In this document: piece by piece, positions 22,096-63,100 of the stretch
Numbering within the stretch: the first letter of the stretch is position 1
How the letters are laid out: each line of letters opens with the position of its first letter
Assembly: GCF_021869535.1 (NCBI RefSeq)
Contig: NW_026262745.1
Coordinates: forward strand, 35,526,001-35,590,000
Direction: 5' to 3'
DNA length: 64,000 nucleotides
Source: Mytilus californianus
Taxonomy: Eukaryota
Translations under genes and position numbers: made by a program
Notes under the pieces: generated by a model
What the model was told of the DNA's origin: nothing
Database searches by the model: none
The model's input: the letters and a program-made list of their open reading frames with translations, nothing else

Positions 22096-25000
22096 ATGAT
22101 GATGAGATTAATGGTATTTCTGATCATTTTTGGAATTTTGTTTACTAACTGTAGAGGAGCAAAGAAAGGTATGGGAAAATCAATTAATATGCTTTGATAG
22201 AATGGCAGCGGAGGCGGACTCAGAATTAAAATGGTCGATAAAAGGGGATCATATACTTACTAAGGAAAACATGAAGTTGTACTTATTGGCTGTGAGTTGC
22301 ATTCTATAGTTTTTGGAAGAAGTAGAAAAAATATAACGACCTTGATTTAATTTATAAGCATTTCATGAATGTTTCATGTACTAATAGTGATAGATTATAA
22401 TATAGAACAGCTAGCTATATACATATATATATATATATCTAACATCACTGAAGAGACATTAATTGTCGAAATCCGGATATGGTGTACAAAAAATCTTTGC
22501 ACCTTTGTTTGCGGTATACCATCTTTGCCCCAAGTTTATTCTTTTCTGTTTGGTATTAAATTTATAGTTAAGATCCATTTATTACACCTTGTGATCCGTT
22601 TATTTGGCAATCGCCAATGGCAGTTAGCAGGATTTAAGAACATTTGTTGTTCGACCTGTTAGTCAAATGCGTTTTGTTAAAATATACTTTTTCACTTTTT
22701 TGGTCTTTTGGAAAATGTTGTTTGTGCTGTATTTAGACCCCTCTAACAAGAAATTTGTTTTGCATGCACACGTATAAAAATTGCGGTTTTTATCCAACGC
22801 AATCATAAGTTTGAACGTTGTTTTCAATTTAGACTTGTATTATATATATAAAAAAATTGCGGATCTAACATTGTTGGGCTGTTATTTAGACGAATTATGT
22901 ATACAGAATGTGTCTTCAGCCTTGTATCACCATCACTGGTGATCCGATGGATAAAATCTGTCGTAGAGTTGTCACTGGTTCAGACGTACTTATGATATAA
23001 TTATTTCTGTGACTGCATCCTACATTAATTTGTAAGATCCTCTACGATAGATAATTCAGCTGATCTGTAAAATTCCATCTTCATGCCTTATATATCATGT
23101 ACTTTGTTACGACGCTAGATATAAACTGACGAGGAAAGGTAACACCCGGGGCGTGTTTTATTGGTCTCTTCAGAATGTCTTCTGGTGGAGAGTCCAAAAA
23201 AATGAATCTGGACCTCTTCTGGAGATATTCTACGGAAGACCAATAAAACAAACATTCAATTTGCCGTCGAATATAGCAGATTTTTGTTATGTTGGATGAC
23301 ATAAGTGAAGTTTACGATTATTTTATAGAAAATTAAGATACGTCCGGTAGACATGATTGTAAAAGTGTGCTATGTTCGTGACATTTTTTTTTGTTCTTTC
23401 CTCTAACTCAATTTTGCTAGACAAATCTGGCTTAAACCCCCACTATTTGATTTTTAAGAATAATCTTAAACTGCACAAAAATTCGTCAATGTTTGTCTAT
23501 CCAATTTTTTTGAAGTAACCAAACTGGATTATTTTTGTATAAAGCAAAGATATCGGAAAGTTTTCAAAATCATTTTTCTCTGGCGGTCCTTGAAGAAAAT
23601 CTTCTGGTCCTAACTATTATTTCTATTGCAAAATTTCGATGGTCAAAACCTTCGGACCACCACTTTTAAAAAATTTTCATTATATATGTATCAATATGCA
23701 AGTATACAATGTATACCAGACATTTCTCAGACTGTTTTTTTTTCTTTTTTTTTTAATAAATCCGTTGGTTGTGTACTGATTGATACTTCAGTCTGGGAGA
23801 ACAAGATTTATTTCAGTACTAGTTGTTATTAGCTTTGAACAAACTTCCAGTAATTGCAAATACTCTTATTTCGGTGCTTTGTGTCTATTGTCTTAATGTA
23901 AGTTTTTTTTTGTGTGTCTCGTACCGTTCTTTTGAGTTAATCTAATTGCAATTGATTTGTGCAGGTTGTTCTTATATTGTACTGTTACACCACTGTCCCA
24001 GCTTCGGGAAGGGTTGAGCGCTCACAAACATGTTCTTGTACTGTTACACCACTGTCCCAGATTAGGGGGCGGGTTGGGCCGGATCCCGCTAAAATGTTTA
24101 ACCCCGCCACATTATTGTCCGTGTAGTTCTTATATTTATCCAGCTTATCGTCCTACAGGGATGTCCTGCTAAGACTGTCATACCATAAAAACGTTTATAA
24201 CACAGCTCACATTCTAATATATCTACATTCATAAATTTATTAATATCATTTAGACTAAACGACGCCATGTTTGTTATGTGCCTCTGCCGTCTAAACTACC
24301 TATCAAAAAAGAAGAGGTGGAAGAGAGCCAGAATATCTTCCCTATTAAAAAAAAACAGAAATGGACCTCTTCTGGCTCACTACCGAAGAACAAAAAAATA
24401 CGCCCCAGCTGGCCACCGAAAGCTTGATTTTCTGTTGAGTCTAGGTGGTCGAGTGGTCTAGCGCGTCGGCGATTTGGTGCCACGATATCTGAGTAGCATG
24501 AGTTCGAATCCCGGCCAGGGAAGAAAAAAAAATGTTTGCTTCCGCAAATTTACAGATCTAACATTATTGGGCTGTTATTTAGACGAATTAGGATGATTTT
24601 CACTGTAACTTTATAAATTGCCACAGGAATCAATAATTTCCTAATTTGCACATTATTATAAACAATACATCACAACTCCTAGTTTAGAAATCTTTGGTTC
24701 CTCTGGAGTTGGGATACGGCATGAAAAAGCAATCAATATTTTTTTCGATTCGTACTTGATAAACCAACGGAAAAAGTAATTGCTTTGCTGTTAGAATTTC
24801 TTTATTTTCTAAATTGTACTCACATGTTCATATACTTTTGTTTGCAAGAGTTAGACATGGTCAAAGAACATTGCACACATGTATCATATCTTTTCAATTC
24901 TTTAAATTTTGAAACACATGTATTTCCACCCAGTAAACCAATAACTGTTCTCGTTCGAGTAGAAAGGGAATTTTAATTTAATTTAATCGTCTTCCAGCAT

Positions 25001-28000
25001 AAATGAAACTAAATTTTAGAAGAATTGAACATCCATTTTGATTTTTTTTTCATGGGGTTTACAATATATATATTTATATATGAGGGTCTGGATGGGGTTT
25101 ACAGAATCGAAAATATTGGGGGGGGGGGGGGAGAAAAATAGGCCCCAAAATAAAGAATAATGAATAATGGGGTCCTAAAATATAACGAAAAGAGAAAATG
25201 TTTTATTTTAAAGAATACAAAATTGAGCCCCCCCTCCAATCCAGATCATCATACATTGATTAATTTAATTTGTTGTGTTACAGATGTTATTTGGTTGGTA
25301 GATGCATCAAGTTCAATATCAGCTACTGACCATGCACTGACAATGGGTTTCATTTACAACGTGACATCACATTTAACTATAGGCGACTCTGATATTAGAA
25401 TGGCAGTCGTTACGTTTGAGGTTGAGACATACGCCGAATTTGAGTTAGATGATAACACCAACAAAGCAAGTCTTCTGTCAGCTATAAACAGCATATCATA
25501 CACTCAATCAACCGTATCTTCGAGGAAAACTATGGACGCATTAACATATACAAAAACACTCTATCTTACCCAAAAAGGAGGTCGCATTGATGCTGGTAAA
25601 GTTGTTATTGTGATAGTAAGCGGCACTTCGACTAGCGAAGCTCAAACTAAGAACACAGCCGGGGATCTCAGAACATCACATGGAGTGGAAGTGTTTGCTA
25701 TAGGCATAGGCTCGGATTTATCTTCAACAAATACCGAATTGCAGGGAATTGCAAACGATCCTGACTCGTATTATGTTGAATATATTGGTGGATTTATAAA
25801 TCTGTGTGGTATTGTTCCATCCATTGTACCTAAGATTGGTGAGTCTCAAATAAAACATTCCAATGGTTGATATGCAAACCCATGCAACATAAAGTAAAAA
25901 TAAAAGATGCAGCATTTCTTTTATGTCTCTTGTGTCACCCGATATTTTGAAATGATTTCATTGATATGTTCAATTCCCCCGTCGGTTTCCGTCTTTTTTG
26001 TATATGCACTCAAAGTAATATGGAATTGTTTCAGCATGCTATTCGTTTATTCCGGAAAGTATGTCCTGCTTTTGATCGCGATATCCTCCAAGCTATATAA
26101 AATAATTCATCGTATTCTGGTGTTTAATTATTCATAGAGCACACTTGTTAACCTTTAGATAATAAGTTGTTATTGGTAAATGTAATAATCAGTATAATAA
26201 TAATCAAAACAACAGAAACATTGAATGTAAATCTTAGAGGTAAGGCATATTTCCGTCTTTTTGCTTAACTTGTATGGTCAAAATCTAATACTCGTCAAAC
26301 CCTACTGGAATTTGAATATTAAAGAATATTCATCGTACATTTAAAAAAAAACATGTTTTATACAATTATTACATATTACATAAATTCAAAATGTCATTCT
26401 GCGCTTCATACTGCTGTTGAAGACATGTTGATAGAAATTTGCAATGTTTAAATTTTTAGAAAAAATTGCCATCCGTAACCAAAATTAATTAATATGTATT
26501 GAAAGACAATGCACAGACCAACTTCTAACATAATGTTGGTTTTAGCAAGGAGGTTAAACCTCCTTGGTTTTAGTTAAGAATTATGTTTTTCCTGTATATT
26601 TTGTAAATAAATTCTAAAATTTACCAAATCTGTCAATGTTACAGTTTCCAGCTATCTCATGTGACCGGTTGTTACAATTTGGTGATCTTTTCAGGGAAAA
26701 ACATAATATTGTTAAAGCTACAATGTAAACTATGGAGCTATGCTATTGTGAATTTAAGTTAAGATTGAATATTTGAGAAAGGGCTCTTTGCTGTGAAATA
26801 AATTTTGGGGAAATTGACCCTTTATATGTACATCTTTATTCTGGTGTTGTCTCCTGGAGATGTAAGATATGTACACACATTTTTCTTCTTTAATTTGAAG
26901 ATAATGAAACAACAGCTACAATGTTGGATGGTTGTGTTGAGTGGGTAGAGCCTACGACCACAGAAATAACTACAACAGACAGAATAACAGAGGCGACAAT
27001 TTCCCAAACAAACGAAGGTATTAGATTGGTTAATTTTCATCAAATACAATAACACTAATGCACATCAATACTGATAATAATCATAACAGAGGCGACAATT
27101 TCCCAAACAAACGAAGGTATTAGATTGGTTAATTTTCATCAAATACAATAACACTAATGCACATCAATACTGATAATAATCCTTCCGCCAAAATAACTTG
27201 TAAATTTTGAATACCCAACTACAAAACTTTGAAAGGCGAGGAAACCTGGTGAGTAATTAATGCAAACTGTGATGAAAGAGTTAAGTGGGTAAATATACTG
27301 GCATAGCATTTAACTACATGTTTTTCCTGATTATCATTTTATCAGTTCTGACTATACAAAATATGTGTTTATTTCACTCGAATTTATAATGAACGTCTAT
27401 CTATATTACCGTTCTAATTTATTATAAACACGTTTATAACAAATCTGTATCTCAACTCACTAACATTTACCCATTGTATCCTATTTTCGAGTGCAATATT
27501 TTGACTGAGTGTGGATTCGCATGGCGGGTGATGCATACATAGCAGGAGACGACTATCAGGTGGACACACCCGTTCTCGGTCCACTAGGGTTTTTTTCCGA
27601 TTACCTCAGTTTTTCTTTAACCTTGTGTTGTATCTTTGTAATAGATTCATGAGATTTGAACATCGGTAAAGTACAGTATTGCCTCTAATTTATATATATA
27701 CTGTATAAAGAATAAACATAAATTGTCTCGAAATATAAATGTTATTTGTACTCGGCTCAAAACAGGATAGAAATGCTTGGCAAAGCCTCGTTTTCTACCT
27801 GTTTCTAAGCCTTGTACAAATAAAATTTACATTTCGGGACAATGTATGTTTATTCTATATATAACATTTGTATTCCACCAATACACATAGTATAAAGTAT
27901 GAGAAACATAATCAGCCTTTTTTCATCTTGGCACTATGCTGTTTAAAAATATTTGTCTGATGCAAACACAAATGCTATTTTAATATCACTACTGATTAGT

Positions 28001-29639
28001 TGTCAAATTAAGATCTAAAAGTACCCGTATTTCTTTTTTTTTTATTTTAGGTTTAGATGCCGGTGCCATCATAGGTATCCTGTTATCATGTTTACTGCTT
28101 TTAGCACTTTCATCCTGCGTATTATACCTACTGTATAGAAGAAAAAGGTATGGTGTAAGATATTCATGTTTATCAGTAACAACGTCGGATTCCGAAAAGT
28201 CTGGAAACAGAAAATCATTTTTACATGTACATGTACATGTACTTGTTCTTTTATATATATATGTATCTAACATAGTCGGACAGTAACATAGGATTGAATT
28301 GTCTGAATATCATTTTAAACGTTCGATTGAACTTTAAAAAAATAACGAGAAAATTGTATACAAAAAAGTATAACAAAAATACCGAACTCCAAGGCAAATT
28401 CAAAAAGAGGGAAGTCCATAAAAATTGACAAAATCAAACGCTATCAGTCAACGGAACAAGTGAAAAACATCTGCCATATTCCTGACTTGGTACAAGCATT
28501 TGCCGAAGAAAATGGTGGGTTAAACCTTGTTTCATAGCTAGCTAAACCTCCCACTTGTATGACAGTTGTCTATAGTTCCGTTATATTGACAAAATTGAGT
28601 GAGCAACCCAAACAGACGTAATAGGTTATAAGATGGATGGATATTGTATCAGTGAATCGATTGTGTAACCATGCTACAGTAGTCGGAATATATACTACCA
28701 CAAACGGTGGTTACAACAAACTCTTATATAATTTTTACTTTGCTCCCCACTGGAGGTATCTTTTTTTTATTAATGGAGAAGTATTGACAAATTTCAATTA
28801 GTAGCATCTAAATGATATACTAGTAATCACATGTTAACTCGTCCAGAGCTTTTTGAGATAATTTAAATGTGCTATATGCCTTTTTATGTTGTTTATAATT
28901 CTTTTTTGAAACTTTTGGCTGATATCAATACTATTGTTAATCATGTACAACTGACACAAAATCTATATACCAAATATACTTTGACCTGCAACTTTAACTG
29001 ACACAATCGAGACGTTCGAGGTGAACTTTCATATTTCAGCTTTTTGTTACGGTATTCTTCTTTCTTAGAAATAAAATTATTACGACAACATTAAAATAAA
29101 ACCAAAGATTACTTTCTTGAACGTTATTTTCGATTTCCAATGCTCATCAACTTCGTTTTTGATTAAGACTTCCATTTCAACTGTTTTGATTCGAGTGCCA
29201 CTGTCGAGATTATGTAGACAAAACGCGCGTTTCATTTTCATCAAATTATATGCCTGGTATCTTTGATGGTTTTTTTTTAATTTTAGAAGAATAAACGCTT
29301 ACTTTCAGTGAAAAGATAAAATCTGCATCTTAAGTCAAATATTTATAGTCCCTAAAATCTACTGTAAACAAAACTACATTTTTATTATTCTTTATTTCAT
29401 TTAGAAGAAAAGACAAAAAAGACCAGATTAATCCTGAAGATACGATAGTAAAGGCTGTGAATGACTACAATAACACAAGTCTTGGAGAAAAAAGACACAT
29501 TTACAAGAGAGACACTACCAGCCTCAATACCAAACCTACTAAAGCAATGAATGAAAATGATACACTGTCTTCAGTGTATGAAAATCTCGGAGAAAGAAGT
29601 GTTACATCGTCTATTATTAATGTAAAACTTCCTATATGA
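22096..29639 (+). CDS. VR1: type I membrane protein, signal peptide - vWA - Ser/Thr stalk - TM - tyrosine-motif tail, 358 aa
   Basis: Exons 22096-22168 (MMMRLMVFLIIFGILFTNCRGAKK), 25284-25838 (vWA, DVIWLVDASSS...NLCGIVPSIVPKI), 26901-27017 (DNETTATMLDGCVEWVEPTTTE...), 28051-28147 (TM, GLDAGAIIGILLSCLLLLALSSCVLYLLYRRKR) and 29405-29639 (tail ending SSVYENLGERSVTSSIINVKLPI). Phases 1,1,1,2; all junctions in frame. Confidence 0.88.
22442..22485 (+). ncRNA. Minimal type I hammerhead ribozyme (PLE-associated type)
   Basis: Stem I ACAUCA/UGGUGU. Core CUGAAGA (22448-22454). Stem II GACA-UUAAU-UGUC. Then GAAA, a palindromic stem III AUCCGGAU, and an AUA cleavage triplet ending at 22479. Confidence 0.75.
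22860..24610 (+). mobile_element. tRNA-head SINE-like or tandem repeat unit interrupted by a TIR element
   Basis: GATCTAACATTRTTGGGCTGTTATTTAGACGAATTA occurs at about 22863 and 24556, marking one repeat period. A box TGGTCGAGTGG (24446-24456) and B box GTTCGAATC (24502-24510). Confidence 0.6.
23146..24408. mobile_element. Non-autonomous TIR element with a nested SINE-like fragment
   Basis: Left end CCGGGGCGTGTTTTATTGG; right end CAAAAAAATACGCCCCAG. GGACCTCTTCTGG is subterminal at both ends. No clear TSD. A common dispersed-repeat fragment lies at about 23950-24120. Confidence 0.6.
26984..27181 (+). repeat. Perfect 99 bp tandem duplication spanning the VR1 stalk-exon splice donor
   Basis: Copy 1 is 26984-27082 and copy 2 is 27083-27181. 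GAAG|GTATTA occurs at 27017/27018 and again at 27116/27117. Confidence 0.9.
27705..27860. repeat. Imperfect palindromic (foldback) element of about 155 bp
   Basis: ATAAAGAATAAACATAAATTGTCTCGAAAT..TTATTTGTAC..GGCTCAAAACAGG.TAGAAA pairs with TTTCTACCTGTTTCTAAGCCTTGTACAAATAA..ATTTCGGGACAATGTATGTTTATTCTATAT. Confidence 0.7.
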
Positions 29640-31529: not shown

Positions 31530-31950
31530 CTTACAAGGTAGCTATTGAATTAAGGGTCATTCCTTCAAAACGTACGGACGCACCACCAGTTTGTTGACCG
31601 TTATGGAATATCTGTGTCACAGATGACCATGGACATGTTCCAATTGTCGCAACCATATTCCAGTCCTCTTTTCCTCGATTCTGACAATATTGAATGAGAC
31701 ATATCACCGGATTTGTACGTGCATGAGCAAAACAGGGGTGCCACATGTAGGGCAGGAACTTTTTATCCCTCCGGATCACCTGAGTTCACCCCCGGTTTTA
31801 GTGTGGGTCGTGTTTCTCGGTCTTTAGTTTTCTATGTAGTGTTTTTGGAATGTTCGTCTTTTCGTCGTTTCTCGTTTATTGCCATGGACTTGTCAGTTTT
31901 TTTTTCAAATTTTGACTTCTTTGAGTTTTGAATGTCCCTTTGGCCTCTTT
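31530..31950 (+). mobile_element. Decayed C-terminus and 3' UTR of a PLE-like RT element
   Basis: Translates as LTR*LLN*G...HHQFVDRYGISVSQMTMDMF, followed by the 3' motif family seen at 18600-18880. Confidence 0.6.
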
Positions 31951-39526: not shown

Positions 39527-40339
39527 GAGTAAAAGGATATATCTACAAAAAGTGTATTACCAGCTTCGATATCAAACCTACAACAGGAAAGAATGTAAAG
39601 GATATACTGACTTTCTCTTGAAGATAGAAGTGTTACCTTATCTGTCATCAATCTTAAAATATCTCTATAAAATATAATCTGTTTTGTTTACATGTATTTA
39701 CTTGCCTCACATGTTCGCTACTTCGAAACTACAAAAAAAACTTCGTCAAGTGACTAAAAAGGGAAAATGTTTCAAAATCCTGTCAATCGTTAAAGGAAAA
39801 GTATTATCATTGAAAAATTACATAAGTTTTGAAATTTCTTTTAATAATGTATACAATGTCACTTGATATTGATACAACCTTTTGGTTTCATATATTTGTT
39901 GAACCTAACTGCCACCAAGCCTCCGAAAGCCCTTGGAAGGTTTTTGCATTAGCTGTTGTCCAACAACTTTTCCTGTCAATCATTGTATTTTCTACAACTT
40001 TTCCATAAAATCTTGTCCTATAAATTGAAATGCCAATTGACATCAAACTTGGCCGGAAACATTCTTAGAGGGTTATTTTAAAAGTTATATCCAATGAGCC
40101 GGTTGTCAAAGATACGGCATAAATATGCAAGTTAAACCATACGATAACATTCACAATATGTTTAATGTCAACACCTTCTCTAAAGTTCAAATTATAATGG
40201 AAAGAAAGAACAATTTACACCCCTTTTATAATCGTGGTTGTTAATCCAACACTTTGCCGCCTTTACTTTAAAGAAAATATGTCAAAATTCCATTAACAAT
40301 CTGAAAATGAGACCAGAGACAAGCAACATTTCAATGTTA

Positions 40340-50500: not shown

Positions 50501-52647
50501 CTTCAATTAAACTGATTGAAAGATTATGTCTTCATCATATGAATATCAGGCACAATCCTTCCCGTTAGGGGTTTAGTATCATACCATCATAACATATATG
50601 AGAAGAACATAACCCGTGTCATGCCAACAACTGGTTTTTAAATAAATGTGTTTAGTGCCGATGCAAAGACCCTATAAGTGAATCAATATTAACGCCAAAA
50701 TATGCAATCTGTAATGACCTGACAACAGTATCGTAACTATATCCCTTCTTAATAAGTCTATTTAAAGGTTTTGTTAGCTTCAGAGGTGAATACTGACATT
50801 TTTGTGCTTTACAAAGAATATTTCCATAAAAAATTGGATGTGAAATACCTGAACGTATAAGAAGTCTGCATGTTGAGCTATATTTACGAATGATGTCCTT
50901 ATACCGATGATAAAATTTAGTAAATGTTTTGACTAGTTTGTGATATCGAAAACCCTGGTGTAATAATTTTTCAGTAATACATAAATTTAATAACACATGT
51001 TCTTTTCCTAACAGAAATTGGGTTCATAGTTGGTGAAATTGTTTTCTGAGGAACACATATTTGAATTAATTTAAAAAACCAAAATTAAGTCTATAAAAAA
51101 CAAGCGTTGACGAGATATTTCAGTCGTACCCGTATACGCAATATACAAAATGGAAAGATATACGTTTGTTTTTTCGTCAAATACTGAATGATTGTTTAAT
51201 GTGTAAAAGTAGACAAACCAATATTTTAGTGATTCGAAATTGGTGATAGTGAGTCGATTACCTATTTCAATCATTTATATTTTGGTACGTGCTTTTATCG
51301 TCTCCTGGCCAGTGCTGTCAGTGTCGTTTTGGGCTAACAGGAAGTTGGAATAACAAATGAGTAAAACCAGGAAGGCCTAAATAAGCACTGAAGACTATGT
51401 CAAATCTAATCTAAAACCCGATAATAACATTCTAAAAATATGCGTATTTATATAGATCAACAATGTTTTCTATTTACCTTTTGACATTGTTGCGACTTTC
51501 AGATGTTCTTTTTTATTCCAGTATTTATTCAAATTACAATTTAGACAAAATATTTGCCATATCCTTAGAATATTATGAATTCATTATAACATGTCCTATA
51601 GTTTCTAAATTCTACGTCATTTGGTCTCTGGTGAAAAGTTGTTCATTGGCAATCATACCACATCTTCTCATATTTATATTGACATCTAAAACGTCATTAC
51701 AGACAATAGCATAGCGAACGAGCAAGGAAATACACACACCTTAGTAGGGACCAAAGGAGGAACATAGCCTTTAGTTCAATGGTTGTCGTTGGTTCATGTC
51801 GGTCATATTTGTTTTTTGTAAATTGTTTTGTTATAAATTTGGCCGTTAGTTTTCTCAATTGAATTGTTTCATATTTTTTTATATCGGTGCCTTTTATAGC
51901 CGACTATACGGTATGGTTTTTTTCTTCTCATTTTTGAAGGCCGTACGGTTGCCTATAATTGCTTACATCCACTTCATTTGAACTTTGGTGGATAGTTGTC
52001 TCATTGGCAATCATACCTCATCTCCTTATTTTTATATAGCCGTCAAAAAAAGAAGAAATATGTACAAATCATCTCTATAGTCGTATATTTGTGTATAGAG
52101 TTTGTCTTTTGAAATATCAAAATCTAGAAAAGGACAATCATTGTTGTTTATAGTTGATACATTTAAAGTCAGTTCCCTTGGGGAAATTTCTGTAGTATAT
52201 TCATAACTATAAAAACCGAAATGAAAAGACCATCAAGAGCATGTAATTTATTTACATTCCATTATTTTAAAGATTGCCAGTAGAGATTAGACAAATTTAA
52301 GCTATCGTATTAAATTGTATTTATGTTTGTCTTTTATCAATAGATTTTTACGCAAAACATGCATTTTGTTTTACATAGTTGCATTATTTGAAGAAGAAGA
52401 AGAAAAAACAAAAACAAAATCAACCCGATGATTCTTTCCTTTTTTTGATTTCAGAAAACGAAAGCGATGCTTGGAACTAATAACTGTCCTTGCTCGTGAA
52501 TATCCAGACATGAAAAATGGATTAGGACCTTCACGAGTGAAATATATAGAAACAAAACATGAATATAAAAATGTACATTCTACGAAGTTTCATACTTTTT
52601 TGAAACTGAGCATGATAAGCAATGGTACCAAAATAGTTTGTCGTTGA
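44530..52647 (+). CDS. VR3: vWA - repeat-rich Ser/Thr stalk - TM receptor with a YxxM/YxN tail, 391 aa
   Basis: Exons 44530-44608 (MGQLIIILCTAFYLIIMLTSTRSAKN), 45565-46116 (vWA, DISFLVDTTDD...), 47391-47642 (stalk), 49631-49730 (TM, GDRAIIVVSVITVVLVLVTVIVGITVIYYLLKYR) and 52455-52647 (KRKRCLELITVLAREYPDMKNGLGPSRVKYIETKHEYKNVHS...KIVCR*). Phases 1,1,1,2. The last exon is the least certain. Confidence 0.82.
47498..47602 (+). repeat. Coding 18 bp minisatellite, (TYSTEL) x about 6, in the VR3 stalk
   Basis: ACATATTCAACAGAATTA and variants in tandem. VR2 has only two good copies. Confidence 0.9.
48382..49390. mobile_element. GC-rich non-autonomous TIR element (Harbinger-like), followed by a second short TIR-type remnant (49394-49530)
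   Basis: Left end (TAA)TGCGGCGTTCACAAAGTGCCGATT versus right-end reverse complement (TAA)AGCCGGGGTCACACATTGACGATT. The interior is rich in CGAT/ATCG motifs and has no coherent long ORF. Confidence 0.6.
49826..50001. mobile_element. TA-target MITE nested in a dispersed repeat
   Basis: TA|CTGTAAACCAACTTATTTTCG ... CGAAAATTAGTTGGTTTACAG|TA. It splits AACAAC-TA-TAGGTCAC of the host repeat. Confidence 0.85.
50012..50996 (-). mobile_element. 5'-truncated PLE-like retroelement: RT C-terminal ORF plus 3' UTR
   Basis: ORF 50652-50996 reads NLCITEKLLHQGFRYHKLVKTFTKFYHRY..., the KLLxQGF/Y..L...F.KFY.R pattern that follows PLE RT domains. It is uninterrupted, so relatively young. The 3' UTR matches 17290-17785. 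Confidence 0.7.
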
Positions 52648-54025: not shown

Positions 54026-57000
54026 TCAAACATCTGGAGGTGGTACTTCTCTGGCTGAAGGATCATTCAGGGCATTAGAATCAAAAATGGCTCTGTTTGT
54101 TCCTTGTCTGGTCATACTGTCATAGGGATCTACCTGGTTCTTTTTACCAAATAATCCCCTCCTGAAAAATGTTGAAATTCATATATCAATTTATATATAA
54201 GGGTTGAGCATGCGTACTGAGTGAAAGTTTTTTCCGCAAACACGTGACACACTGATACCGATATCATACTTTATTATCATTTATGGCAGTTGCTTCTAAC
54301 ATTTTCACCCGAAAATTACAATGCTTGGAATACTTTTCCAAAATTTCAGAATGTGCCATCAAGTTGGCAAATGATTTAAGTCTAGACGGTTACAACAAAT
54401 CGATAATATTAGAAACATCACCGTTTTGATTGTGTAGACAAAACGCAATTCAGCTGTACAAAATTCCAAGCCTGGTATCTTTGATGAGTTGTAACAACCA
54501 TTGTGTCGATTCCACTGTAAGGGTATCACCAGCCCAGTTTTCAGCACTTCAGTACTCAAATAGAATATCAATTACGCCATCATTTTTTTCAGTAAAGTTA
54601 CTATTCATAAAACTTTAAAATCTTTCGAATTTTATTGTTTTCTATCCACAAGTAAAGAACGCCATGGTCAGATTTGACACAACCTTTTGGATATTTAGTT
54701 TTCAATGTTTGACTTCCTAATTACGATTTGACCTTCAAACGGATTTAACTCGAGCGCCACTGACGAGTCTTGTGTTGACGAATTGCGCGTAAAATATTAT
54801 AAACCTATTATCTTTGATGAGTTTTTTTTTTTCAACATTCCTAGAAGTTTAAAAAACAAAAAATTGTAATACCAAAAAAAAAATATGCATTTAAAATTTT
54901 GAATGAAATCCAGCAGTTGCAGGAATAGGAAATGTTTTAAGAAGGAAATCCTTATTTTCACCCCAATTTCTTTTTTGGATTAAGAATAAGCACAACACTG
55001 TCACGATAACGTTAATTGAGAGTAATATCATCTAGAACCTGTGAATTATGTATGTCAAAAGAACACATTTCGAACTTATAGTATCAATAATCATTTTTGC
55101 CGTTTGTATTTTGTTGTCTCACATTGTATATTTCCTGTAGATTGCTAATTCCCTGTAGTCTCATTGTCAATATAATTCAACCTAGAGTAGGTAGTTTCAC
55201 AGTAACTTTAAAGACTAGCTTTGATTGCTGATAACATTGATGTTAATAGTTCGGAAAGAGGTTTGTGGAGCAATAGAAAGACCAAGCAATATAAAAATAA
55301 GGAGATGTGGTATGATTGCCTATGAGACAACAATCCACCAAAGTTCAAATGAAGTGGATGTAAGCAATTATAGGCAACCGTATGGCCTTCAACAATGAGA
55401 AGAACCCATACCGTATAGTCGGCTATAAAAGGCCCAGACATGAACCAACGATGACCACTGAACTACATGCTCCTGATTTGGGACGGGCACATATAGAATG
55501 TGACGAGGTTAAACTAGTTTGCTGTCGCAACCCCTCCCCCTCTAACCTGGGACAGTGGTGTAACAGTACAACATAAAAGCAATCTTTAAAAATCACTATT
55601 AACGTATTTACAGTTTCTTTTCAAGTAAAGATGCAATAAGTGCGGTAAGGCCTAATCCTGCAACAGCTGCTACAGTCGCCACTGCGGCCACTACCACTGT
55701 GTTATCCTCTGTAAAAAAAAACATATCATTAAAAAATGTCTGTAGTTAATGTTCTCCTGCTTTAAATCTGTTTTTAAAAACCATTGGCTTCCCTGTTAAG
55801 GTAAAACCACTTTGTCAGCTAACATCACAATTATAAGGCTAATGTGACCTTTGTTAGCTGTTGAATTTCTTAATCATAAAAGTCGAATGGTTTCTTATTT
55901 TCAAATTGCTTTGAATTTATGTGTTACATACATGTATATGTGTACTATAAAAATAAGGAGATGTGGTATGATTGCCAATGCGTTAACTATCCACCAAGTT
56001 CAAATGAAGTGGATGTAAGCAATTAGAGGCAACCGTACGGCCTTCAACAATGAGAAGAACCCATACCGTATAGTCGGCTATAAAAGGCCCCGACATGAAA
56101 AATATGAAACAATTCAGTTGAGAAAACTAACGGCCTAATTCATAACAAAACAATTTACGAAAAACAAATATGACAGACATCTGGGGCAGTGGTTTTACAG
56201 ATCAACATAAGAACAAAATATAAAAATCAGTTAAAAAGGGCTTATTTCATCAGATCGATACAAAGCAGAAAAAAATCTACCAAAAACAGACCAGACGCGA
56301 CAGGGTATTTATACTTTCTAACAACAATACATGGTTATAAATAATCTTAGAATATTTTTTCCAGTTGATGTTTATTTTTTTTTCGATCCTTGAACATAGA
56401 TAAATCAACAAAAATGGTAGCATCCGCTGTCAATTCAATTTACAGATACTGAGGTAATATTTAGTATATAATTGTATGATTATGCGCATTAGTTTCGTTC
56501 TTGTTGATCCCCTTCTGACCGATGTAAGTTAGTGATTCAATTAGTCTTTTGCTTCGTCGTGAAATATGGAATTGAACTATAACATACAACGTTTTTTTTC
56601 AGCGCCGAAGACATTTTTTTCTTTTGGAGGGGGAAGGGTCAAAATCGAGCAAATCAAAAAACGTTTTGTCGCTTGCTAGCGATACTTCAGTTTCACAATT
56701 TGTGAAATGTTGTATTGGCAAGAAAGAGGGGCGGAAGAACGTTTTGTCGGGACGTCGGGATTGGACCATTATTTTTGCTAGAACTCGGGATTTACACTTA
56801 TCGGAAATCGGGAATTACACTAATCGGCAATCGGAAATAGATAATAAGGAATCCTGGAAATATTGCTATTCCTCCCCTCCCCCGGGAATTCGGGATTCGG
56901 CGTTAATTTTCCCGGGAATTCGGGATACAACCCGTCCTAGCCCCCCCCCCCCCCCCCCCCCCCCCCCGTTTCCAGGAAGAATTTTGATTTAACAGATAAG

Positions 57001-60000
57001 GTCAAGATGGGAAGGTGCATTGTAATTGAATAATAGCATTGCCGTTGTATTGTGCCATGAATTAAGAAAAACGTAATTCGAACAATGATCCATTCACCCT
57101 GTTTTCTCATTGCTCCTGTATATCAAAGGAAGAGATTCAGGTTTTAATTTACAGAAACATCTTGCTTTCTGTGAGTAATTTGATGATCACGAGTGGCGTT
57201 CTTTAGCCCAGTCTTCGGTTGCACATAAAGCGAATGTTATTCTCTTCTTGAAATTTTTACCACCTTCATCCCCTTTCACTTTAAATGCGTTTTATTTGTA
57301 GATAGAATGGTTCAGTTTCATCATATTAAAGTCGTCCTTGTGAGATATACCGGCGCAGACGGCAGCTTATTTTCCATCCGGCAACCCCGTTATCGCTCAC
57401 TTCACCTCGTTCTCTATTCAAGGTCCGAAAATCAATGTTGTGACGATTTTTCAAAGATTCTAACCAACAATTTTTCGCTTTGAATGTTCCCGATTAACAA
57501 ACTTTAATCCCTTCTCCTGTATTATAGACAGATAGCGTTTATGCGCCAAAAGCATCGTTATATACCATTTCCAGAACAGAACATATATTTTCTTATTGTC
57601 AGTCGGTCTAAGTTGTTAGTATCTGTGAATGGGCACATTGCTTTCGAAGTCTGTCATAACTTCGGCTTTTTGGCTCAGGAAATGATTAATTTGAATATGC
57701 CCAACTCCCATTAGTATCGCTTTTTTTCGGTATGAAATTTTGTCAACTTCGGACTTTTCTGATAACTTCTTGACGCCGCTCTAACGTTAAGGTATTGACT
57801 TATTGTATGTCATTTTCACGGAATAAATAAAATTAACACATACATTAGTTGCATCATAAGCGCATTTCTTGATTTTTCTTCATCAGGAACGCCCAAAGCC
57901 AAGCCTTTGAAAGCCCAGTGTACAAGTACTTAAGCTGAGGAGCTAATAATTTAGGGTAATCAATTATTTGTTGAAGAATATAGCTTGCAAGTTTCTACAT
58001 TTAGAAGAAAAAAACCCAGAGATGTCATTCTTTACCAAATTAATAAAATCAAAATATATTTGAGAATTTAAGCATATTTAAAAAAATAAATAAATAAACA
58101 AGGCATAAAATAAGTTGGTATACATAAGCGAACAGAAAAGATGATTTTAAACACGATACTGCGACGTTTTCTCTAAAAAGACACCATTGGCTAACATGAG
58201 TACAGAAATACATATTTCTTTAAGTACCAAGTGATCTGGACTTTTCCAATCCCGAAACCCTCTACTCAGAACCTGTCTCGTTAATTTCTTGTATCTAAAT
58301 ACAAAATAATTGACCAATAAATGATTTATAATATCACCTTCCAACTTTCCATACGAAAAATGATTTCTTGTTTTTGTATAAAAGAAACACTGTCTTGTAT
58401 TACATGTTTAGTTCTAAACATGTTTAGGATTATGTTTAATATCTAAACACATTTATCAGTAAGCACATTAAATGTACATGTAGGCATGTCTAGAATTTAA
58501 ACACTTTTAAATGTGTTTTAGAATTAAAGTGTTTAGGATTAAAACACTAATGCAAAGCCTAACTCGATCCTAAACACAATCCTAAACACATTGTCAACCT
58601 AAACATATTTAGAACGGAGTCATGTTTAGATCAAAACGTGTAAAAAAAGTGCACAAAAGATATGCTTAGAATTCTGTTTATGCTCTAAGCACAATTTTAC
58701 AGTGTAGTGTATCAATAAATGTTTCATAAACTCATATTCCAACTGTCCATGCGAACAAAAAGATTACTGTACTATTATCTTTAGTGATATGTTATCAATC
58801 AAACTTGATTTGAGGAAAGAAAAAGGTGGATAGCAAAAGTCTAATATGCATGAAATGGATACTTAGTATATCATTCGCGTTTTTTTTACAAGTACAATGT
58901 ACGGTTTTTGTTTTAAAAGTTTGAATATATTTTTTATTTTTCTACTTTCACAGTGTCATGTTATATACTTTTGATCCTTATAGATTCTGTAAACAATCTG
59001 CAGAAAAAAATGAGGCAGATGATACCAGAAGGGATAAAATCACAGATGATACCAGAAGGGATAAAATCACAGATGATACCAGAAGGGATAAAATCACAAG
59101 TCGAAGTTAAACTGACAACACCATCATGGCAAAAAATAAAATCTATGTAAAGAAAATCAAAACTCCACAAAACAGAAAACGAAGACTGAGCAGCAAGAAC
59201 CCAATCAAAAACACGGGATGATCTCAAGTGCGTCGGAAGGGTAAGCTGACCCTTCTCTGAATATTAATGATATTGCAAAAAGGATTTGTAACTTTTCCTA
59301 CGATGTTAAGATTACCTGGAGATGTTGATGTTGATGCTTGAGTCGCCGGACATCCAGTAACAGCCTGAGGAGTAACCGTTGGATCTAAATAAAAAAAAAC
59401 ACATAATTTAATTTAAGCCACGATATTTAGTTTCCTCAAATGTAGTAAATGCATACATCTTTTGAAGTATCAACAACAAAAATTTGATGCATAAAATTTC
59501 AGACTTTATATCTTTGTCGCTTATCAAACAAAATTTAATCACGTGATTTTATGTTGGCTGTTTACGTTCCAGGAATGATTAATTCATACATACAAGCGAA
59601 AATATATCAATATGTGGGATCTGATGTGACATTTGATTATGTCGTAGATTTTTGGTAAGGTACGAAATTAGCTCCAAGTCGACTACAAACATTTCTGGAT
59701 AGTCGATGGTCTTGTTCTTTAAGAGCAAAGAAGGGAAAGTGTGGAGCTCTCTACAATTAAAAAAATCGTAGCAACTCCTTTCAGCTCCTATCCAATATGT
59801 CTTTCCCCCCATAATTCATCCTTAATTACTCTCTCTTCAGACAATACTTGTTTGATTTATTGATTAGTTCTCGTCATGAATATGCATGAAAGATGTGCCA
59901 ATGTGGATTTTAAACAAAAACAATCAAATCATGTATGCGTTAAGAATGTTGCCTCCGAGACATATAACGATTAGAACAGGAAATTATTAAAATAAAAAGG

Positions 60001-63000
60001 ATGGCGAGGGGCTTAGTTATAAAACCGGTTCAATCCACAATTTGAATTTTTAAACAATGGCTGTGCAAAGTTAGGTAATATGTAGCATATAACCTACCAA
60101 TTTTTCTAATGTTGAAGAGTTGCTATCCGAAATTACTAGTAACAAGTTCCTTAGATATTGATTTGGATTGTAATGTACATGTCATCCACTATATTTCAAA
60201 CGACAAACAGACCCCTTAAACGTTTAATCATATTCAACATAACTGTCCTATTTCATGTCATTCAGTTTTGTTATATCACGTTGACAATTCTATAAGATCT
60301 AATTTTGGATAAATTAAAACAGATTTGAAACACTAGTCCTGATTGATATTCTGGTCTTGGAAAACATTGTACGTTTGTGCTTCGGTCAGCGAATACTCTG
60401 AGATTGGAATCTGTACCAAGTCAGGAATATGACAGTTGTTGTCCATTCGTTTGATGTGTTTTATCATTTGATTTTGCCATTTGATTAGGGACTTTCCGTT
60501 TTGAATTTTCCTCGGAGTTCAGTATTTTTGTGATTTTACTTTTTTCAGTCAAGATAAAAATAAGGAGATGTGGTGTGATTGCCAATGAGACTACTGTCCA
60601 CCAAATTTCAGATGGAGTGGATGTTAGCAGTTAAAGGCAACCGTTTGGCCTTCAACAATGAGAAAAACCCATACCGTATAGTCGGCTATAAAAGGCCCCG
60701 GCATGAAAAATGTGAAACAATTGAATTGAGAAAACTAACGCCCTAATTTATAACAAACATTTACGAAAAACAAATATGACAGACACGAACCAACGACAAC
60801 CACTGAACTACAGGCTTCTGACTTAGGACAGGCACATAAAGGATGTGGCGTGGTTAAACGTGTGTGCGCATTCAACCCACCCCTAATATGGGAGAGTGGT
60901 ATAACAGCACACCAAAAGATCAAACTGTAAAATCAGTAGCAATTGACCATTTCAAGGCCATTTCAACTGATTCTTACAGTTTATTCTAATGTCGTGCTGT
61001 TAAAACACTGTCCCAGGTTAGAGGAAGGTCGAAATTTCAACATGTTAAACCCCGACATACCAATTATGTGCCTGTCCCAAACCAAGGATCTGTTGTCTAA
61101 TGGTTGTCGTTGATTGCCGCTTGTCTTTACAGCTTTGTTTTATATATCACGGGGCATTTTATACGTGTAGCTTACTATACGATTAGTCTTTGCTTAATTA
61201 TGAGGTGTCCAGTAGTTACAACCAGGTCTTTGGCCTTTATTGGATAGTTGTTTCTTTGGCAACCACACCACACCTCCTTATGTTCATACAAACTATTTGG
61301 TAGATTTTAAAATTGTGTCATTGTGCAATTGAAAAGTTTACTTTAACAGCCCAAGACAGTCTTTTGTCACATTGTGTATATATTATGTATTGCCATAACA
61401 TTTCATGTATGCGCTTGTAAATAAACGTTCACCAATTACAAATATAACAAATAGAACCTATAAATTGCGTTCACTACAAGAAAATGTTAAATTATAATTT
61501 TCTACTTACCAATCTTAGGAACAACGGTCGGAATCAGACTACACAGATCGACATATGACTCCACGTGATGGGAGTAATAAGAATCAGGGTCACTGGACAT
61601 ACTTAATAACTCAACATTACTTGCGGATATAGCTGAGCCAATTCCAATGGAGAATACTTCCGCACCGAGATTAGTTTTGAGTAAATCAGCTTCTGCTGCA
61701 GTTCTCGGATAGTTCACGGATTGTCCATCGGTCAATATAATAACAGTCTTATCTGCATTTGAACGACTTCCTTTTGAAGATATAAAAGAAGACGTCCGTA
61801 CAAAAGTTAAGGCATCGTATGTGTATGTGCTACCACTTGGCGTGATACTTTTGAGGCCACTGATGGCATTTAATATCGTAGCATTTGTTGAGTAGTCGTT
61901 CAAATCAAAACGTTCTGTGATATCGCTAGAAAACGTCACTACCGAGAATTGGGTCGCAGTTGAACCAACTGCGATAAATTTAGTCACATTGTATATAAAA
62001 TCTACAGCTTCTGAGAAATCCTCTGTAGACAAACTGGCTGACTTATCCACCACGAATACTACATCTGTAATATGTGTACATTTATATAATGTTAAATAAG
62101 TCATATAACTGCAAATTCCTTAAATGGAATTGGAACAATTTGATTTCCCTTTGTCTGTTTTATGTTGAAATCTAACACATGGTTTGACATTAATCTTTAG
62201 TACGCGATATTTATTATTTAAGCAGTTTGAATAATTATGTATGGACACCTGTCTATTGATGACTGTATGTTACCCTCTATATATCTAATAGATATTTTGT
62301 GTTGTTGGGTTGCTTGCTACCTCATTGACGTATACCCACATACTCTGAAGATCGCAAAAATACATTTTAAGTATAGTCTTTATAAATGTTAAAACAATGA
62401 AAACTTCTTTAAATTGGTTGAACTGGTACAAATTTTAACATAACTGGTAACAAATATTTTTTTCATGTGTTCTTAAATTTTATTTCTGGAATGAATTCTT
62501 TTTCTATACAGGAAGTCTTACAAACTTCTGTTTTATGCAATATTGATAATCTATAAACGACGACACAGATATCATATATATAATTCATAAGTTGTTGAAT
62601 GAATATATGTTTAAATCTTCTATATATCTTTATTCTCATCACCAAATATAAATGGAATACAGAGAAGATATGTTATACATTACATTAAATACATAAACAT
62701 AAATATACAATATATACAAAAACAACAACAATAATTTCAATTTATTCAGGAGAACACTCGCTTGTTTATAATTCTTCTGAACTTTCATAAATTCATGAGA
62801 TCTGTCCTATTCATAGAAGACATATTTTCAGTTAATAGTATAATAATTAGCCTTCTATTTAAATTTTGTTTTATAAATTTATTTCTCTCTTCTACTAAAT
62901 CATTAAAATCATGTTAAGTATTGTATGTTTAGTTTGGTAGCGATGATTATATTGTTATTATTCTGCTCTCATGAGGACATACTTTGGTTAATTAATAGAA

Positions 63001-63100
63001 TTACTGTATACCAGATAGTATCTATATATATCTTACCTTTTAACAAGTAAACATTCGATGGAAATATTACAATCCAAAGAAAAATCCTATTTGAAATCAT
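54026..63100 (-). CDS. VR4: vWA (intact MIDAS) - short stalk - TM receptor with a YxxM tail, 306 aa
   Basis: Exons 63037-63100 (MISNRIFLWIVIFPSNVYLLK), 61510-62064 (vWA, DVVFVVDKSAS...ILTDG...DLCSLIPTVVPKI), 59316-59384 (DPTVTPQAVTGCPATQASTSTSP), 55612-55708 (TM, EDNTVVVAAVATVAAVAGLGLTALIASLLEKKL) and 54026-54161 (RGLFGKKNQVDPYDSMTRQ...EVPPPDV*). Phases 1,1,1,2. Confidence 0.88.
54430..54830 (+). mobile_element. Partial tandem of a hammerhead-bearing (retrozyme-like) repeat, period about 330 bp
   Basis: GAC(A/G)AA..GC followed by CCT..TATCTTTGATGAGTT occurs twice (about 54447 and 54777). The second copy has CTGACGA-GTC-TTGTGTT-GAC-GAAT (54760-54783), with GAAA mutated. Confidence 0.55.
57851..57892 (-). 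ncRNA. Partly degenerate minimal hammerhead ribozyme motif
   Basis: The minus strand reads GCGUUC-CUGAUGA-AGAAAAAUCAA-GAAA-UGCGCUUA-UGAUGC. Core nucleotides and stem I are present; stem II is poorly paired. Confidence 0.4.
59016..59096 (+). repeat. 27 bp unit x3 at the 3' terminus of an inverted retroelement remnant
   Basis: CAGATGATACCAGAAGGGATAAAATCA three times in tandem. Confidence 0.9.

What the first reader, a model, noticed from the sequence alone, without database searches (positions are those of the whole stretch)
22096..63100. Cluster of four vWA - mucin stalk - TM receptors with paired-receptor features
Seen: four genes share one exon plan (signal exon, one 552-555 nt vWA exon, a Cys-bearing S/T stalk exon, a 97-100 nt TM exon, a tail exon; phases 1,1,1,2). 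The vWA domain starts directly after the signal peptide. Known: single-vWA type I proteins exist (ANTXR1/2 with an Ig-like domain; apicomplexan TRAP with a TSR), and clusters of related ectodomains with inhibitory, activating or null tails define paired receptors such as KIR, LILR and Siglec. Inference: this is a bivalve surface-recognition family, possibly immune or adhesive, using an I-domain-like module on a glycosylated stalk. I do not recognise it as a described family. The ORF track shows only the vWA exons and some stalk or tail fragments.
Basis: partly seen in the sequence, partly recalled or inferred. Interest (0 to 1): 0.88.

Follow-up and report, generated by a model that had tools for sequence, protein, structure and literature searches.

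The report
Four stalked single-vWA membrane protein genes
This stretch of the California mussel genome holds four neighbouring genes for cell-surface proteins that carry one integrin-I-domain-like (vWA) head on a sugar-rich stalk; the family is real, shared with oysters and scallops and unstudied, but the evidence does not show an immune "paired receptor" system.

Summary
The window (Mytilus californianus) holds four intact paralogues, VR1 to VR4. Each has a signal exon, one 552/555-nt vWA exon, a Cys-bearing Ser/Thr-rich stalk, a 97/100-nt TM exon and a tail exon. All introns are GT-AG with phases 1,1,1,2. VR2 has a second stalk exon. VR1 and VR2 match existing RefSeq models exactly, and two RNA-like run assemblies from a related mytilid join all the parts in one ORF.

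The cluster has the same order and orientation in M. edulis. The exon plan, a Cys pair and a cytoplasmic motif recur in oysters, and scallops carry the vWA-Cys signature. The vWA is I-domain-like; its nearest relatives are byssal PTMP1, integrin alpha1/alpha2 I domains and collagen VI. Only VR4 keeps a full MIDAS metal site.

The paired-receptor reading is weak. No TM segment contains a charged residue. VR1, which carries the ITIM-like motif, is only 33-40% identical to its neighbours. All four genes are under purifying selection (dN/dS 0.06-0.44). Features that do resemble it are VR1's conserved SVYENL block and VR2, an old tail-less chimera with a VR3-type head and a VR1-type stem.

The most likely function is matrix or ligand adhesion. 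The family is unstudied and carries misleading automatic names such as "collagen-like" and "matrilin-like". I rate it a new variant of a known kind, of moderate interest.

The parts
22096..22168 (+). VR1 exon 1 (signal peptide MMMRLMVFLIIFGILFTNCRGAKK; RefSeq uses the upstream ATG at 22051)
25284..25838 (+). VR1 exon 2, vWA domain, 555 nt, phase 1-1; MIDAS DASSS..T..S (the last Asp is lost)
26901..27017 (+). VR1 exon 3, stalk with an N-glycosylation sequon and the conserved Cys
28051..28147 (+). VR1 exon 4, TM segment (97 nt), GxxxGxxxS-type, no charged residue
29405..29639 (+). VR1 exon 5, 81-aa tail with box 1 (AVNDY..LGEKRHIY) and box 2 (SVYENLGERSVTSS; SVYENL lies at 29571-29588)
32669..32747 (+). 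VR2 exon 1 (signal peptide)
33987..34538 (+). VR2 exon 2, vWA, 552 nt; MIDAS degenerate (DTTGD..T..Y)
37110..37316 (+). VR2 exon 3, stalk A (VR3-type, 18-nt repeats x3.5)
38257..38358 (+). VR2 exon 4, stalk B (VR1-type); isoform X1 uses an acceptor 24 nt upstream
38859..38955 (+). VR2 exon 5, TM segment (97 nt, VR1-type)
39448..39526 (+). VR2 exon 6, truncated 29-aa tail without Tyr; the stop position is shared with M. edulis
39527..39670 (+). Untranslated remnant of the VR1-type tail after the VR2 stop (..LSLEDRSVTLSVINLKISL)
44530..44608 (+). VR3 exon 1 (signal peptide)
45565..46116 (+). VR3 exon 2, vWA, 552 nt; MIDAS degenerate (DTTDD..T..Y)
47391..47642 (+). VR3 exon 3, stalk, 47% Ser/Thr, 18-nt (TELTYS) repeat x6.4 at 47487-47601
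49631..49730 (+). VR3 exon 4, TM segment (100 nt)
52455..52647 (+). VR3 exon 5, tail (box 1: VLAREYPDMKNGLGPSRVKY). Inferred here; 88-89% identical to the tail exon inside the annotated M. edulis gene, dN/dS 0.18
63037..63100 (-). VR4 exon 1 (hydrophobic N-terminus MISNRIFLWIVIFPSNVYLLK)
61510..62064 (-). VR4 exon 2, vWA, 555 nt; complete MIDAS (DKSAS..T..D); dN/dS 0.06 against M. edulis
59316..59384 (-). VR4 exon 3, short Pro/Ser/Thr stalk with the conserved Cys
55612..55708 (-). VR4 exon 4, TM segment (97 nt)
54026..54161 (-). VR4 exon 5, 48-aa tail (DPYDSM..G..AIF)

Best explanation
This is a conserved tandem cluster of four paralogous genes of a pteriomorph-bivalve family of single-pass type I membrane proteins. 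Shown: each protein is a signal peptide, one I-domain-like vWA domain, a stalk, a TM helix and a cytoplasmic tail. The family is marked by an invariant Cys in the last vWA helix, a 'PK[IL]D' boundary and a second invariant Cys 22 residues later in the stalk. Inferred mechanism: the vWA head is held above the membrane on an O-glycosylated stalk, probably clamped by a disulfide between the two Cys, and binds an extracellular protein ligand. That ligand is most plausibly collagenous or another matrix protein, as for the nearest relatives (integrin alpha1/alpha2 I domains, collagen VI N domains, byssal PTMP1). Binding would be metal-dependent through MIDAS in VR4 and in the ancestral oyster-type members. 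In VR1, VR2 and VR3 the MIDAS site has decayed, so binding there would be metal-independent or altered. A cytoplasmic motif shared by mussels and oysters (box 1, AVxxYxxxx[LI]G[EP]xxxx[FY]) would couple the receptor to an intracellular partner. VR1 adds a second conserved block containing SVYENL. VR2 is an old exon-shuffled chimera (VR3-type head, VR1-type stem and TM, truncated tail) that could act as a non-signalling or modulatory copy. The phase 1-1 vWA and stalk exons explain how modules were duplicated and swapped without breaking the reading frame.
For: Gene models and phases. Exact RefSeq matches for VR1 and VR2. An uninterrupted ORF joining signal, vWA, stalk, TM and tail in two short run assemblies (L001, L002). 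Same gene order and orientation in M. edulis, and VR1-VR2 adjacency in M. coruscus. Purifying selection (dN/dS of vWA exons 0.06-0.44, of tails 0.18-0.54). Invariant Cys pair and boundary across mussels and oysters. The signature LC..PK[ILV]D..C is absent from about 140 multi-vWA hits but present in two scallop proteins. Oyster genes have the same exon plan and phases, and M. gigas has three tandem copies. Nearest sequences and structures are PTMP1, integrin alpha1/alpha2/alphaL/alphaE I domains and collagen VI alpha3. MIDAS states. Tail motifs. VR2 chimerism. Oyster alpha integrins lack alphaI domains: PMC7390872 and the abstract of PMC4237329.
Against: There is no expression, localisation or binding data, so the ligand and even the tissue are unknown. 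Signal peptides and TM segments were judged from hydrophobicity and charge only (no SignalP or TMHMM), and VR4's N-terminus is a weak signal peptide. The disulfide is inferred from invariance and from model confidence holding up to about residue 220; it was not measured. Similarity to collagen-binding vWA domains is only 23-32% identity and does not fix ligand specificity. The family's range outside Pteriomorphia could not be assessed. I did not find RefSeq records for VR3 or VR4 of M. californianus; their models rest on orthologues in other Mytilus species.
Confidence: 0.5

Rival explanations
1. One reading: an immune paired-receptor cluster, with VR1 inhibitory through an ITIM that recruits an SHP-type phosphatase, and other members activating or null, recognising pathogen or self ligands.
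For: The genes form a tandem cluster. SVYENL fits the ITIM consensus and lies in a block that is almost unchanged between Mytilus VR1 and a mytilid protein only 57% identical overall. VR2 and VR3 share 79% vWA identity but have different TM segments and tails, and VR2's tail is truncated without Tyr. VR1 to VR3 evolve faster than VR4.
Against: No TM segment has a charged residue that could recruit an ITAM adaptor. VR1's ectodomain is only 33-40% identical to the others. Orthology is 1:1 by position, synteny is stable, all dN/dS values against M. edulis are below 0.55, and the MIDAS-face loops show no excess of changes. M. edulis has TVYENL, paralogue P0016 has Phe at the Tyr position, and YENL equally fits a Grb2-type YxN site. 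No immune expression data or literature were found.
Confidence: 0.15
2. Matrix-associated proteins (shell, byssus or connective tissue) whose vWA ectodomain is shed or incorporated into the extracellular matrix, with the TM segment serving only as a transient anchor.
For: The closest solved relative is the byssal collagen-binding protein PTMP1 (PMC4754843). vWA units joined by poly-Thr linkers are typical of the mollusc shell proteins BMSP/Pif (PMC6231486). [quoted passage not shown]
Against: The cytoplasmic tails are conserved under purifying selection, and box 1 is shared between mussels and oysters, which a disposable anchor would not need. No chitin-binding or other matrix domain is present. 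I saw no obvious furin-type cleavage site in the stalks. The identity of the shell-proteome ESTs with this family could not be tested.
Confidence: 0.15
3. Decaying duplicates or annotation artefacts: some of the four are pseudogenes or mis-joined exons.
For: VR2 has a premature stop relative to VR1's tail, with recognisable tail remnants after it. I did not find RefSeq proteins for VR3 or VR4 in M. californianus.
Against: All four reading frames are intact with canonical splice sites. dN/dS is well below 1. VR2's stop is at the same position in M. edulis while its ectodomain stays constrained. VR2 has three RefSeq isoforms.
Confidence: 0.03

Closest known systems
ANTXR1/ANTXR2 (TEM8/CMG2)
   Same: Type I membrane protein whose ectodomain starts with a single MIDAS-type vWA domain that binds matrix proteins, followed by a single TM segment and a signalling tail.
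   Different: ANTXR has an Ig-like domain (Anth_Ig) between the vWA domain and the membrane, and a conserved Ant_C tail. Neither is detectable here even at E<=1. ANTXR is not among the top 60 sequence hits or the top 50 structural hits. Here the spacer is a Ser/Thr-rich stalk with a single Cys.
Apicomplexan TRAP / MIC2
   Same: One I-domain-like vWA domain at the N-terminus of a type I adhesin with a short tail. TRAP and MIC2 vWA domains appear among the hits.
   Different: TRAP and MIC2 have a thrombospondin repeat and a tail that couples to the gliding motor. No TSR is present here, and the lineage is unrelated.
Integrin alphaI (inserted) domains, especially collagen-binding alpha1/alpha2
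   Same: Best structural match after PTMP1 (TM-score 0.81-0.89 normalised to the target, rmsd about 2.2 A). The same MIDAS motif is present in VR4.
   Different: There is no beta-propeller, no beta subunit and no C-terminal internal-ligand linkage; the domain stands alone on a stalk. AlphaI integrins are absent from bivalves (PMC7390872; PMC4237329).
Mytilus PTMP1 (proximal thread matrix protein 1; PDB 4cn8)
   Same: A mussel protein that is the closest solved vWA by sequence after collagen VI (E 2.7e-29) and the top Foldseek hit (28-32% identity).
   Different: PTMP1 is a secreted two-vWA byssal matrix protein with no TM segment or tail. It was not recovered with the family's Cys/PK[IL]D signature.
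Vertebrate paired receptors (KIR, LILR, Siglec, PIR)
   Same: Tandem cluster; one member has an ITIM-like motif; one member has a truncated tail produced by exon shuffling.
   Different: Those families use Ig or lectin ectodomains that are more than 80-90% identical within a pair (from general knowledge), with a charged TM residue in the activating member and rapid, often diversifying evolution. None of these features was found here.
Mollusc VWA-CB shell proteins (Pif/BMSP)
   Same: vWA units followed by poly-Thr linkers; lineage-specific expansion in molluscs (PMC6231486).
   Different: Those proteins are secreted, multi-vWA and carry chitin-binding domains. No such domain is present here, and the family signature is absent from the multi-vWA hits.

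Membership tests
vWA / integrin I-domain fold (Pfam PF00092) | Significant match to the VWA profile and a Rossmann-like alpha/beta fold | tested here: met
   E-values 1e-26 to 4e-35 for all four exons. The AF2 model has pLDDT 80-94 over the domain, with Foldseek TM-scores of 0.81-0.89 (normalised to the target) to integrin alpha1/alpha2 I domains.
vWA / integrin I-domain fold (Pfam PF00092) | Complete MIDAS (DxSxS, Thr, Asp) | tested here: inconclusive
   Met in VR4 (DKSAS, T, D) and in the oyster members. Not met in VR1 (last Asp replaced by Ser) or in VR2/VR3 (DTTGD or DTTDD, with Tyr for Asp).
ANTXR (anthrax toxin receptor) family | Anth_Ig domain after the vWA domain and an Ant_C cytoplasmic domain | tested here: not met
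   A Pfam scan at E<=1 of full-length orthologues and of the three tails finds only VWA-type families above threshold.
TRAP/MIC2 adhesins | Thrombospondin type 1 repeat after the vWA domain | tested here: not met
   No TSP_1 hit.
Integrin alpha subunit | FG-GAP beta-propeller and integrin_alpha2 leg domains | tested here: not met
   The ectodomain is only the vWA domain plus a stalk of 26-106 aa, and there are no such Pfam hits.
Matrilin / FACIT or type VI collagen (the automatic database names) | EGF plus coiled-coil (matrilin), or Gly-X-Y triple-helical repeats (collagen) | tested here: not met
   No such Pfam hits, and no Gly-X-Y runs are visible in the translated models. Similarity is confined to the vWA domain.
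Pif/BMSP VWA-CB proteins | Chitin-binding domain(s) after the vWA domain(s) | tested here: not met
   No chitin-binding hit.
Paired receptors | Clustered paralogues | tested here: met
   Four genes lie within 41 kb, and the cluster is conserved in M. edulis.
Paired receptors | Near-identical ectodomains attached to opposing signalling tails | tested here: not met
   VR1's vWA domain is 33-40% identical to the others. The best pair, VR2/VR3, is 79% identical, with VR2 tail-less rather than activating.
Paired receptors | ITIM ([SIVL]xYxx[IVL]) in the inhibitory member | tested here: inconclusive
   SVYENL is present in VR1 and conserved in M. coruscus, M. trossulus and P0007. M. edulis has TVYENL, and the homologous block in P0016 has Phe. 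Phosphorylation and phosphatase binding are not testable here.
Paired receptors | Charged residue inside the TM segment of the short-tailed (activating) member | tested here: not met
   No Asp, Glu, Lys or Arg lies inside any of the four TM segments.
Paired receptors | ITAM-bearing adaptor partner | not testable with these tools
   There is no adaptor gene in the window and no interaction data.

The most novel reading that the evidence does not exclude
Stand-alone I-domain receptors on stalks are the bivalve answer to the alphaI-domain integrins that protostomes lack. In this reading VR4 and the oyster-type members are the MIDAS-dependent matrix (collagen) receptors. In Mytilus the family has additionally produced MIDAS-less members with Tyr-motif tails (VR1 with an ITIM-like block, VR3) and a tail-less chimera (VR2), which together behave as a primitive signalling/decoy receptor set built on a vWA ectodomain instead of Ig or lectin domains.
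Probability: 0.12. Interest if true: 0.75.

Novelty: new variant of a known kind. Interest (0 to 1): 0.42.

Why it matters
Single-vWA type I receptors are known from vertebrates (ANTXR) and from apicomplexans (TRAP/MIC2). A third, independent design (vWA, Cys-clamped Ser/Thr-rich stalk, TM, tail with conserved motif) that is conserved in tandem clusters across mussels and oysters, with related forms in scallops, would add a receptor class to animals that have no alphaI integrins. The cluster also gives a clean natural series for study: a member with an intact MIDAS site, one that has lost one MIDAS residue and two that have lost three, plus an old exon-shuffled tail-less chimera. These allow direct tests of how vWA receptors change ligand chemistry and signalling. 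In practical terms, the public names for these genes ('collagen alpha-1(XX)-like', 'matrilin-1-like', 'cartilage matrix protein-like') are misleading and will distort enrichment analyses in bivalve transcriptomics.

Tried and rejected
1. The profile search of 1.8 billion representatives was swamped by multi-vWA proteins whose scores sum over domains. It gave no usable picture of the family's range beyond two scallop hits, so distribution outside Pteriomorphia is unknown.

2. The look-up of encoding contigs for the M. californianus protein P0031 found no record, so I could not see how RefSeq annotates VR3 and VR4 in this species.

3. Literature searches found no paper on this family: ITIM + von Willebrand + bivalve; UniProt K1R0L2; the run accessions and LOC gene ids; ANTXR in molluscs.

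4. Weak Pfam hits over the stalk and TM regions are all below their curated cut-offs and look compositional, so I rejected them. They were TMEM154 (E 2e-4 and 4e-5), SIT 'SHP2-interacting adaptor' (E 0.063), Podoplanin and WBS28.

5. Substitutions between orthologues do not cluster on the MIDAS-face loops: VR1 has 5 observed against 5.9 expected.

6. VR2 against M. coruscus gives dN/dS 0.97, but this rests on only 13 substitutions, so I do not take it as evidence of positive selection.

7. Deep branching among the VR1, VR2/3, VR4, oyster and scallop clades is unresolved, so I make no claim about which mussel gene is orthologous to which oyster gene.

8. ANTXR, TRAP, integrin, matrilin/collagen and Pif/BMSP membership were each rejected on missing defining domains.

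Full report
**Observation.** The region contains four ORFs that match the Pfam VWA profile at E 1e-26 to 4e-35. They are 33-40% identical to the first one, and the two middle ones are much closer to each other. I found the remaining exons by scanning open segments for hydrophobic and Ser/Thr-rich stretches and by mapping database orthologues back onto the window.

All four genes assemble into intact reading frames with canonical GT-AG introns:
- VR1 (+): 22096-29639, 5 exons, 358 aa.
- VR2 (+): 32669-39526, 6 exons, 371 aa.
- VR3 (+): 44530-52647, 5 exons, 391 aa.
- VR4 (-): 63100-54026, 5 exons, 306 aa.

The vWA exons are 555, 552, 552 and 555 nt. The TM exons are 97, 97, 100 and 97 nt. The intron phases are 1,1,1,2. 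No other family exon lies in the window.

**Identity of the window and support for the junctions.**
- The VR2 model is letter-for-letter XP_052077778.1 of Mytilus californianus, named 'collagen alpha-1(XX) chain-like isoform X2'.
- VR1 equals XP_052077780.1 ('uncharacterized protein LOC127715658') apart from RefSeq's choice of an upstream ATG at 22051. The window is therefore M. californianus, and two of the four models already exist in RefSeq. VR2 has three isoforms, one of which uses an acceptor 24 nt upstream of stalk exon B.
- P0007, a mytilid protein 57% identical to VR1, is encoded as one uninterrupted ORF on 1.2-1.3 kb contigs from two separate sequencing runs. An in-frame signal peptide lies upstream. 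In an intron-rich gene family this is what spliced mRNA looks like, so the vWA exon is joined to the stalk, TM and tail exons in transcripts.
- The VR3 tail exon was my inference, from a strong acceptor and the family motif. It lies inside the annotated 410-aa M. edulis orthologue at 88-89% identity with dN/dS 0.18.
- VR4's TM and tail exons were located with the M. galloprovincialis/M. edulis orthologue P0018.

**Conservation.** In M. edulis the four genes lie in the same order and relative orientation within about 41 kb (VR4 +, then VR3, VR2 and VR1 on the opposite strand). The annotated products are 304, 410, 382 and 358 aa. In M. coruscus VR1 and VR2 are adjacent, and the VR4 orthologue lies on the same contig.

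Nei-Gojobori dN/dS between M. californianus and M. edulis:

| Gene | vWA exon | Tail exon |
|---|---|---|
| VR1 | 0.44 | 0.54 |
| VR2 | 0.29 | not computed |
| VR3 | 0.25 | 0.18 |
| VR4 | 0.06 | 0.21 |

All four genes are therefore maintained by purifying selection, and VR4 is by far the most constrained. Amino-acid differences between orthologues are not enriched on the loops of the MIDAS face (VR1: 5 observed, 5.9 expected).

**The family beyond mussels.**
- Saccostrea and Magallana proteins of 341-375 aa have the same architecture.
- Across ten mussel and oyster sequences, the Cys in the last vWA helix, the Lys and Asp of the 'PK[IL]D' boundary and a Cys 22 residues further on are invariant, and 'DPDSYY' is nearly so.
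- The signature LC..PK[ILV]D..C is absent from the roughly 140 multi-vWA proteins that topped a profile search of 1.8 billion representatives. It is present in two scallop proteins: one from Mizuhopecten, and an 817-aa Argopecten protein with two vWA units, a TM segment and a long tail.
- The M. gigas and Saccostrea genes have the same exon plan: a signal exon, a 555-nt vWA exon, one or two stalk exons, a TM exon and a tail exon, with phases 1,1,1,2 (1,1,1,1,2 in Saccostrea, which has two stalk exons). M. gigas carries three such genes in tandem.
- The phase 1-1 symmetry of the vWA and stalk exons explains the extra stalk exons of VR2 and Saccostrea and the two-vWA scallop form. This last point is an inference.

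**What the parts look like.**
- Head. The vWA domain is closest by sequence to collagen VI alpha3 domains, the mussel byssal protein PTMP1 and integrin alphaE/alphaL I domains. An AlphaFold model of the VR4 orthologue is confident over the domain, and up to about residue 220, which is just past the second Cys. Its best structural matches are PTMP1, the collagen-binding integrin alpha1/alpha2 I domains (TM-score 0.81-0.89 normalised to the target) and collagen VI N domains. ANTXR is not among the top hits in either search.
- MIDAS. The site is complete in VR4, the oyster proteins, P0016 and P0007. It lacks the final Asp in Mytilus VR1, and it is DTTGD or DTTDD with Tyr for Asp in VR2 and VR3. 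The VR2/VR3 clade sits on a very long branch.
- Cys pair. The mature ectodomains of VR1, VR3 and VR4 contain exactly two Cys, the invariant pair. VR2 has the same pair plus two more in stalk B.
- Stalks. They are 26-106 aa long and 31-47% Ser/Thr. VR3 carries 6.4 copies of an 18-nt repeat and VR2 carries 3.5.
- TM segments. They are strongly hydrophobic, contain no charged residue and are followed by basic residues.
- Other domains. Nothing in Pfam matches the stalks or tails.

**Tails.** An alignment of the tails shows a membrane-proximal box 1, AVxxYxxxx[LI]G[EP]xxxx[FY]. It is shared by VR1, VR3 and the oyster proteins, and is recognisable in reduced form in VR4 and P0016. The VR1 clade has a second block, SVYENLGERS(V/T)TSS, which is almost unchanged between Mytilus and the 57%-identical P0007. 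SVYENL fits the ITIM consensus. However, M. edulis has TVYENL, the homologous block in P0016 has Phe in place of Tyr, and YENL equally fits a Grb2-type YxN site.

**VR2 is a chimera.** Its promoter, signal, vWA and stalk A regions align to VR3 (71-85% DNA identity). Its stalk B, TM and tail regions align to VR1 (70-74%). Its tail stops before box 1, at the same position as in M. edulis, and remnants of the VR1-type tail are still readable after the stop. These results agree with the sibling notes of the scan on this window.

**Interpretation.** The architecture, the I-domain-like head and the family's existence are shown. The function is inferred. I favour a cell-surface adhesion or ligand-binding receptor, cation-dependent in VR4 and in the ancestral type and altered in VR1-3, with a conserved cytoplasmic docking motif.

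The paired-receptor reading fails its defining tests: ectodomains are not near-identical across opposing tails, no TM segment carries a charged residue, and there is no sign of rapid or diversifying evolution. It keeps some life through VR1's conserved Tyr block and the VR2/VR3 pair.

A matrix-protein reading is suggested by PTMP1, by the vWA-poly-Thr design of BMSP/Pif (PMC6231486) and by VWA proteins in a Mytilus nacre proteome that carry the same automatic name as VR4 orthologues (PMC4517812). The conserved tails argue against that reading.

Oyster alpha integrins lack alphaI domains, and the authors of that study suggested that invertebrates have compensatory mechanisms (PMC7390872; see also the abstract of PMC4237329). 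A stand-alone I-domain receptor family is a candidate for such a mechanism, but this is speculation.

**Novelty and score.** I found no paper on this family, and its database names are automatic and misleading. It is best described as a new variant of the known kind 'single-vWA type I adhesion receptor'. It fails the tests for membership of the ANTXR, TRAP, integrin, matrilin/collagen and Pif/BMSP families. Interest is moderate: the family is solid, conserved and experimentally tractable, but it sits in a phylum already known for vWA expansions, and the most exciting claim (paired receptors) is not borne out.

Noticed in passing
window 26984-27181: A perfect (100% identical) 99-bp tandem duplication covers the last 34 nt of the VR1 stalk exon, its donor site and 65 nt of intron. 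It is either very recent or an assembly artefact. Reading through from the first copy runs into an in-frame stop, so it should not change the protein.
   Followed up: partly
L005:19235-19786 and L004:22510-23061 (M. edulis): The M. edulis gene at the VR2 position has a vWA exon closer to VR3 than to M. californianus VR2 (81% against 79% aa identity; dS 0.30 against 0.43). The two M. edulis paralogues differ by only dS 0.23. This suggests gene conversion between VR2 and VR3 in one lineage.
   Followed up: partly
L004:4812-5006 (M. edulis, beyond VR4): A 65-aa vWA fragment (about 40% identical to the VR proteins) lies about 5 kb upstream of the VR4 orthologue. It may be a fifth copy or a pseudogene. 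The equivalent position in M. californianus lies beyond the end of this window.
   Followed up: no
window 59016-59098 (- strand, VR4 intron 3): A perfect 27-nt x3.1 tandem repeat produces a spurious hydrophobic ORF (LLVSSVILS repeated). It is not part of the gene.
   Followed up: no
window 23953-24113, 55528-55595, 63521-63599; also 28362-28494 with 60412-60545, and 29107-29284 with 33372-33540: Short dispersed repeats (75-94% identity) are shared between introns and flanks of different VR genes. They are probably small transposable elements. GC-richer blocks at 48-50 kb and 56-58 kb also look like insertions; one ORF there ends in a poly-Pro run.
   Followed up: no
L003:21901-26372 (M. coruscus): The M. 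coruscus annotation has a 629-aa gene model with no Pfam hit on record that starts at the VR2 orthologue and runs off the locus. It is probably a mis-joined VR2+VR3 model.
   Followed up: no
window 28051-28147 and 38859-38955: The TM segments of VR1 and VR2 (and of P0007) share the motif G-I-L-L-[SA]-C-L, preceded in VR1 by GxxxG. This small-xxx-small pattern is typical of TM helix dimerisation. Together with the stalk Cys it hints at dimers.
   Followed up: no
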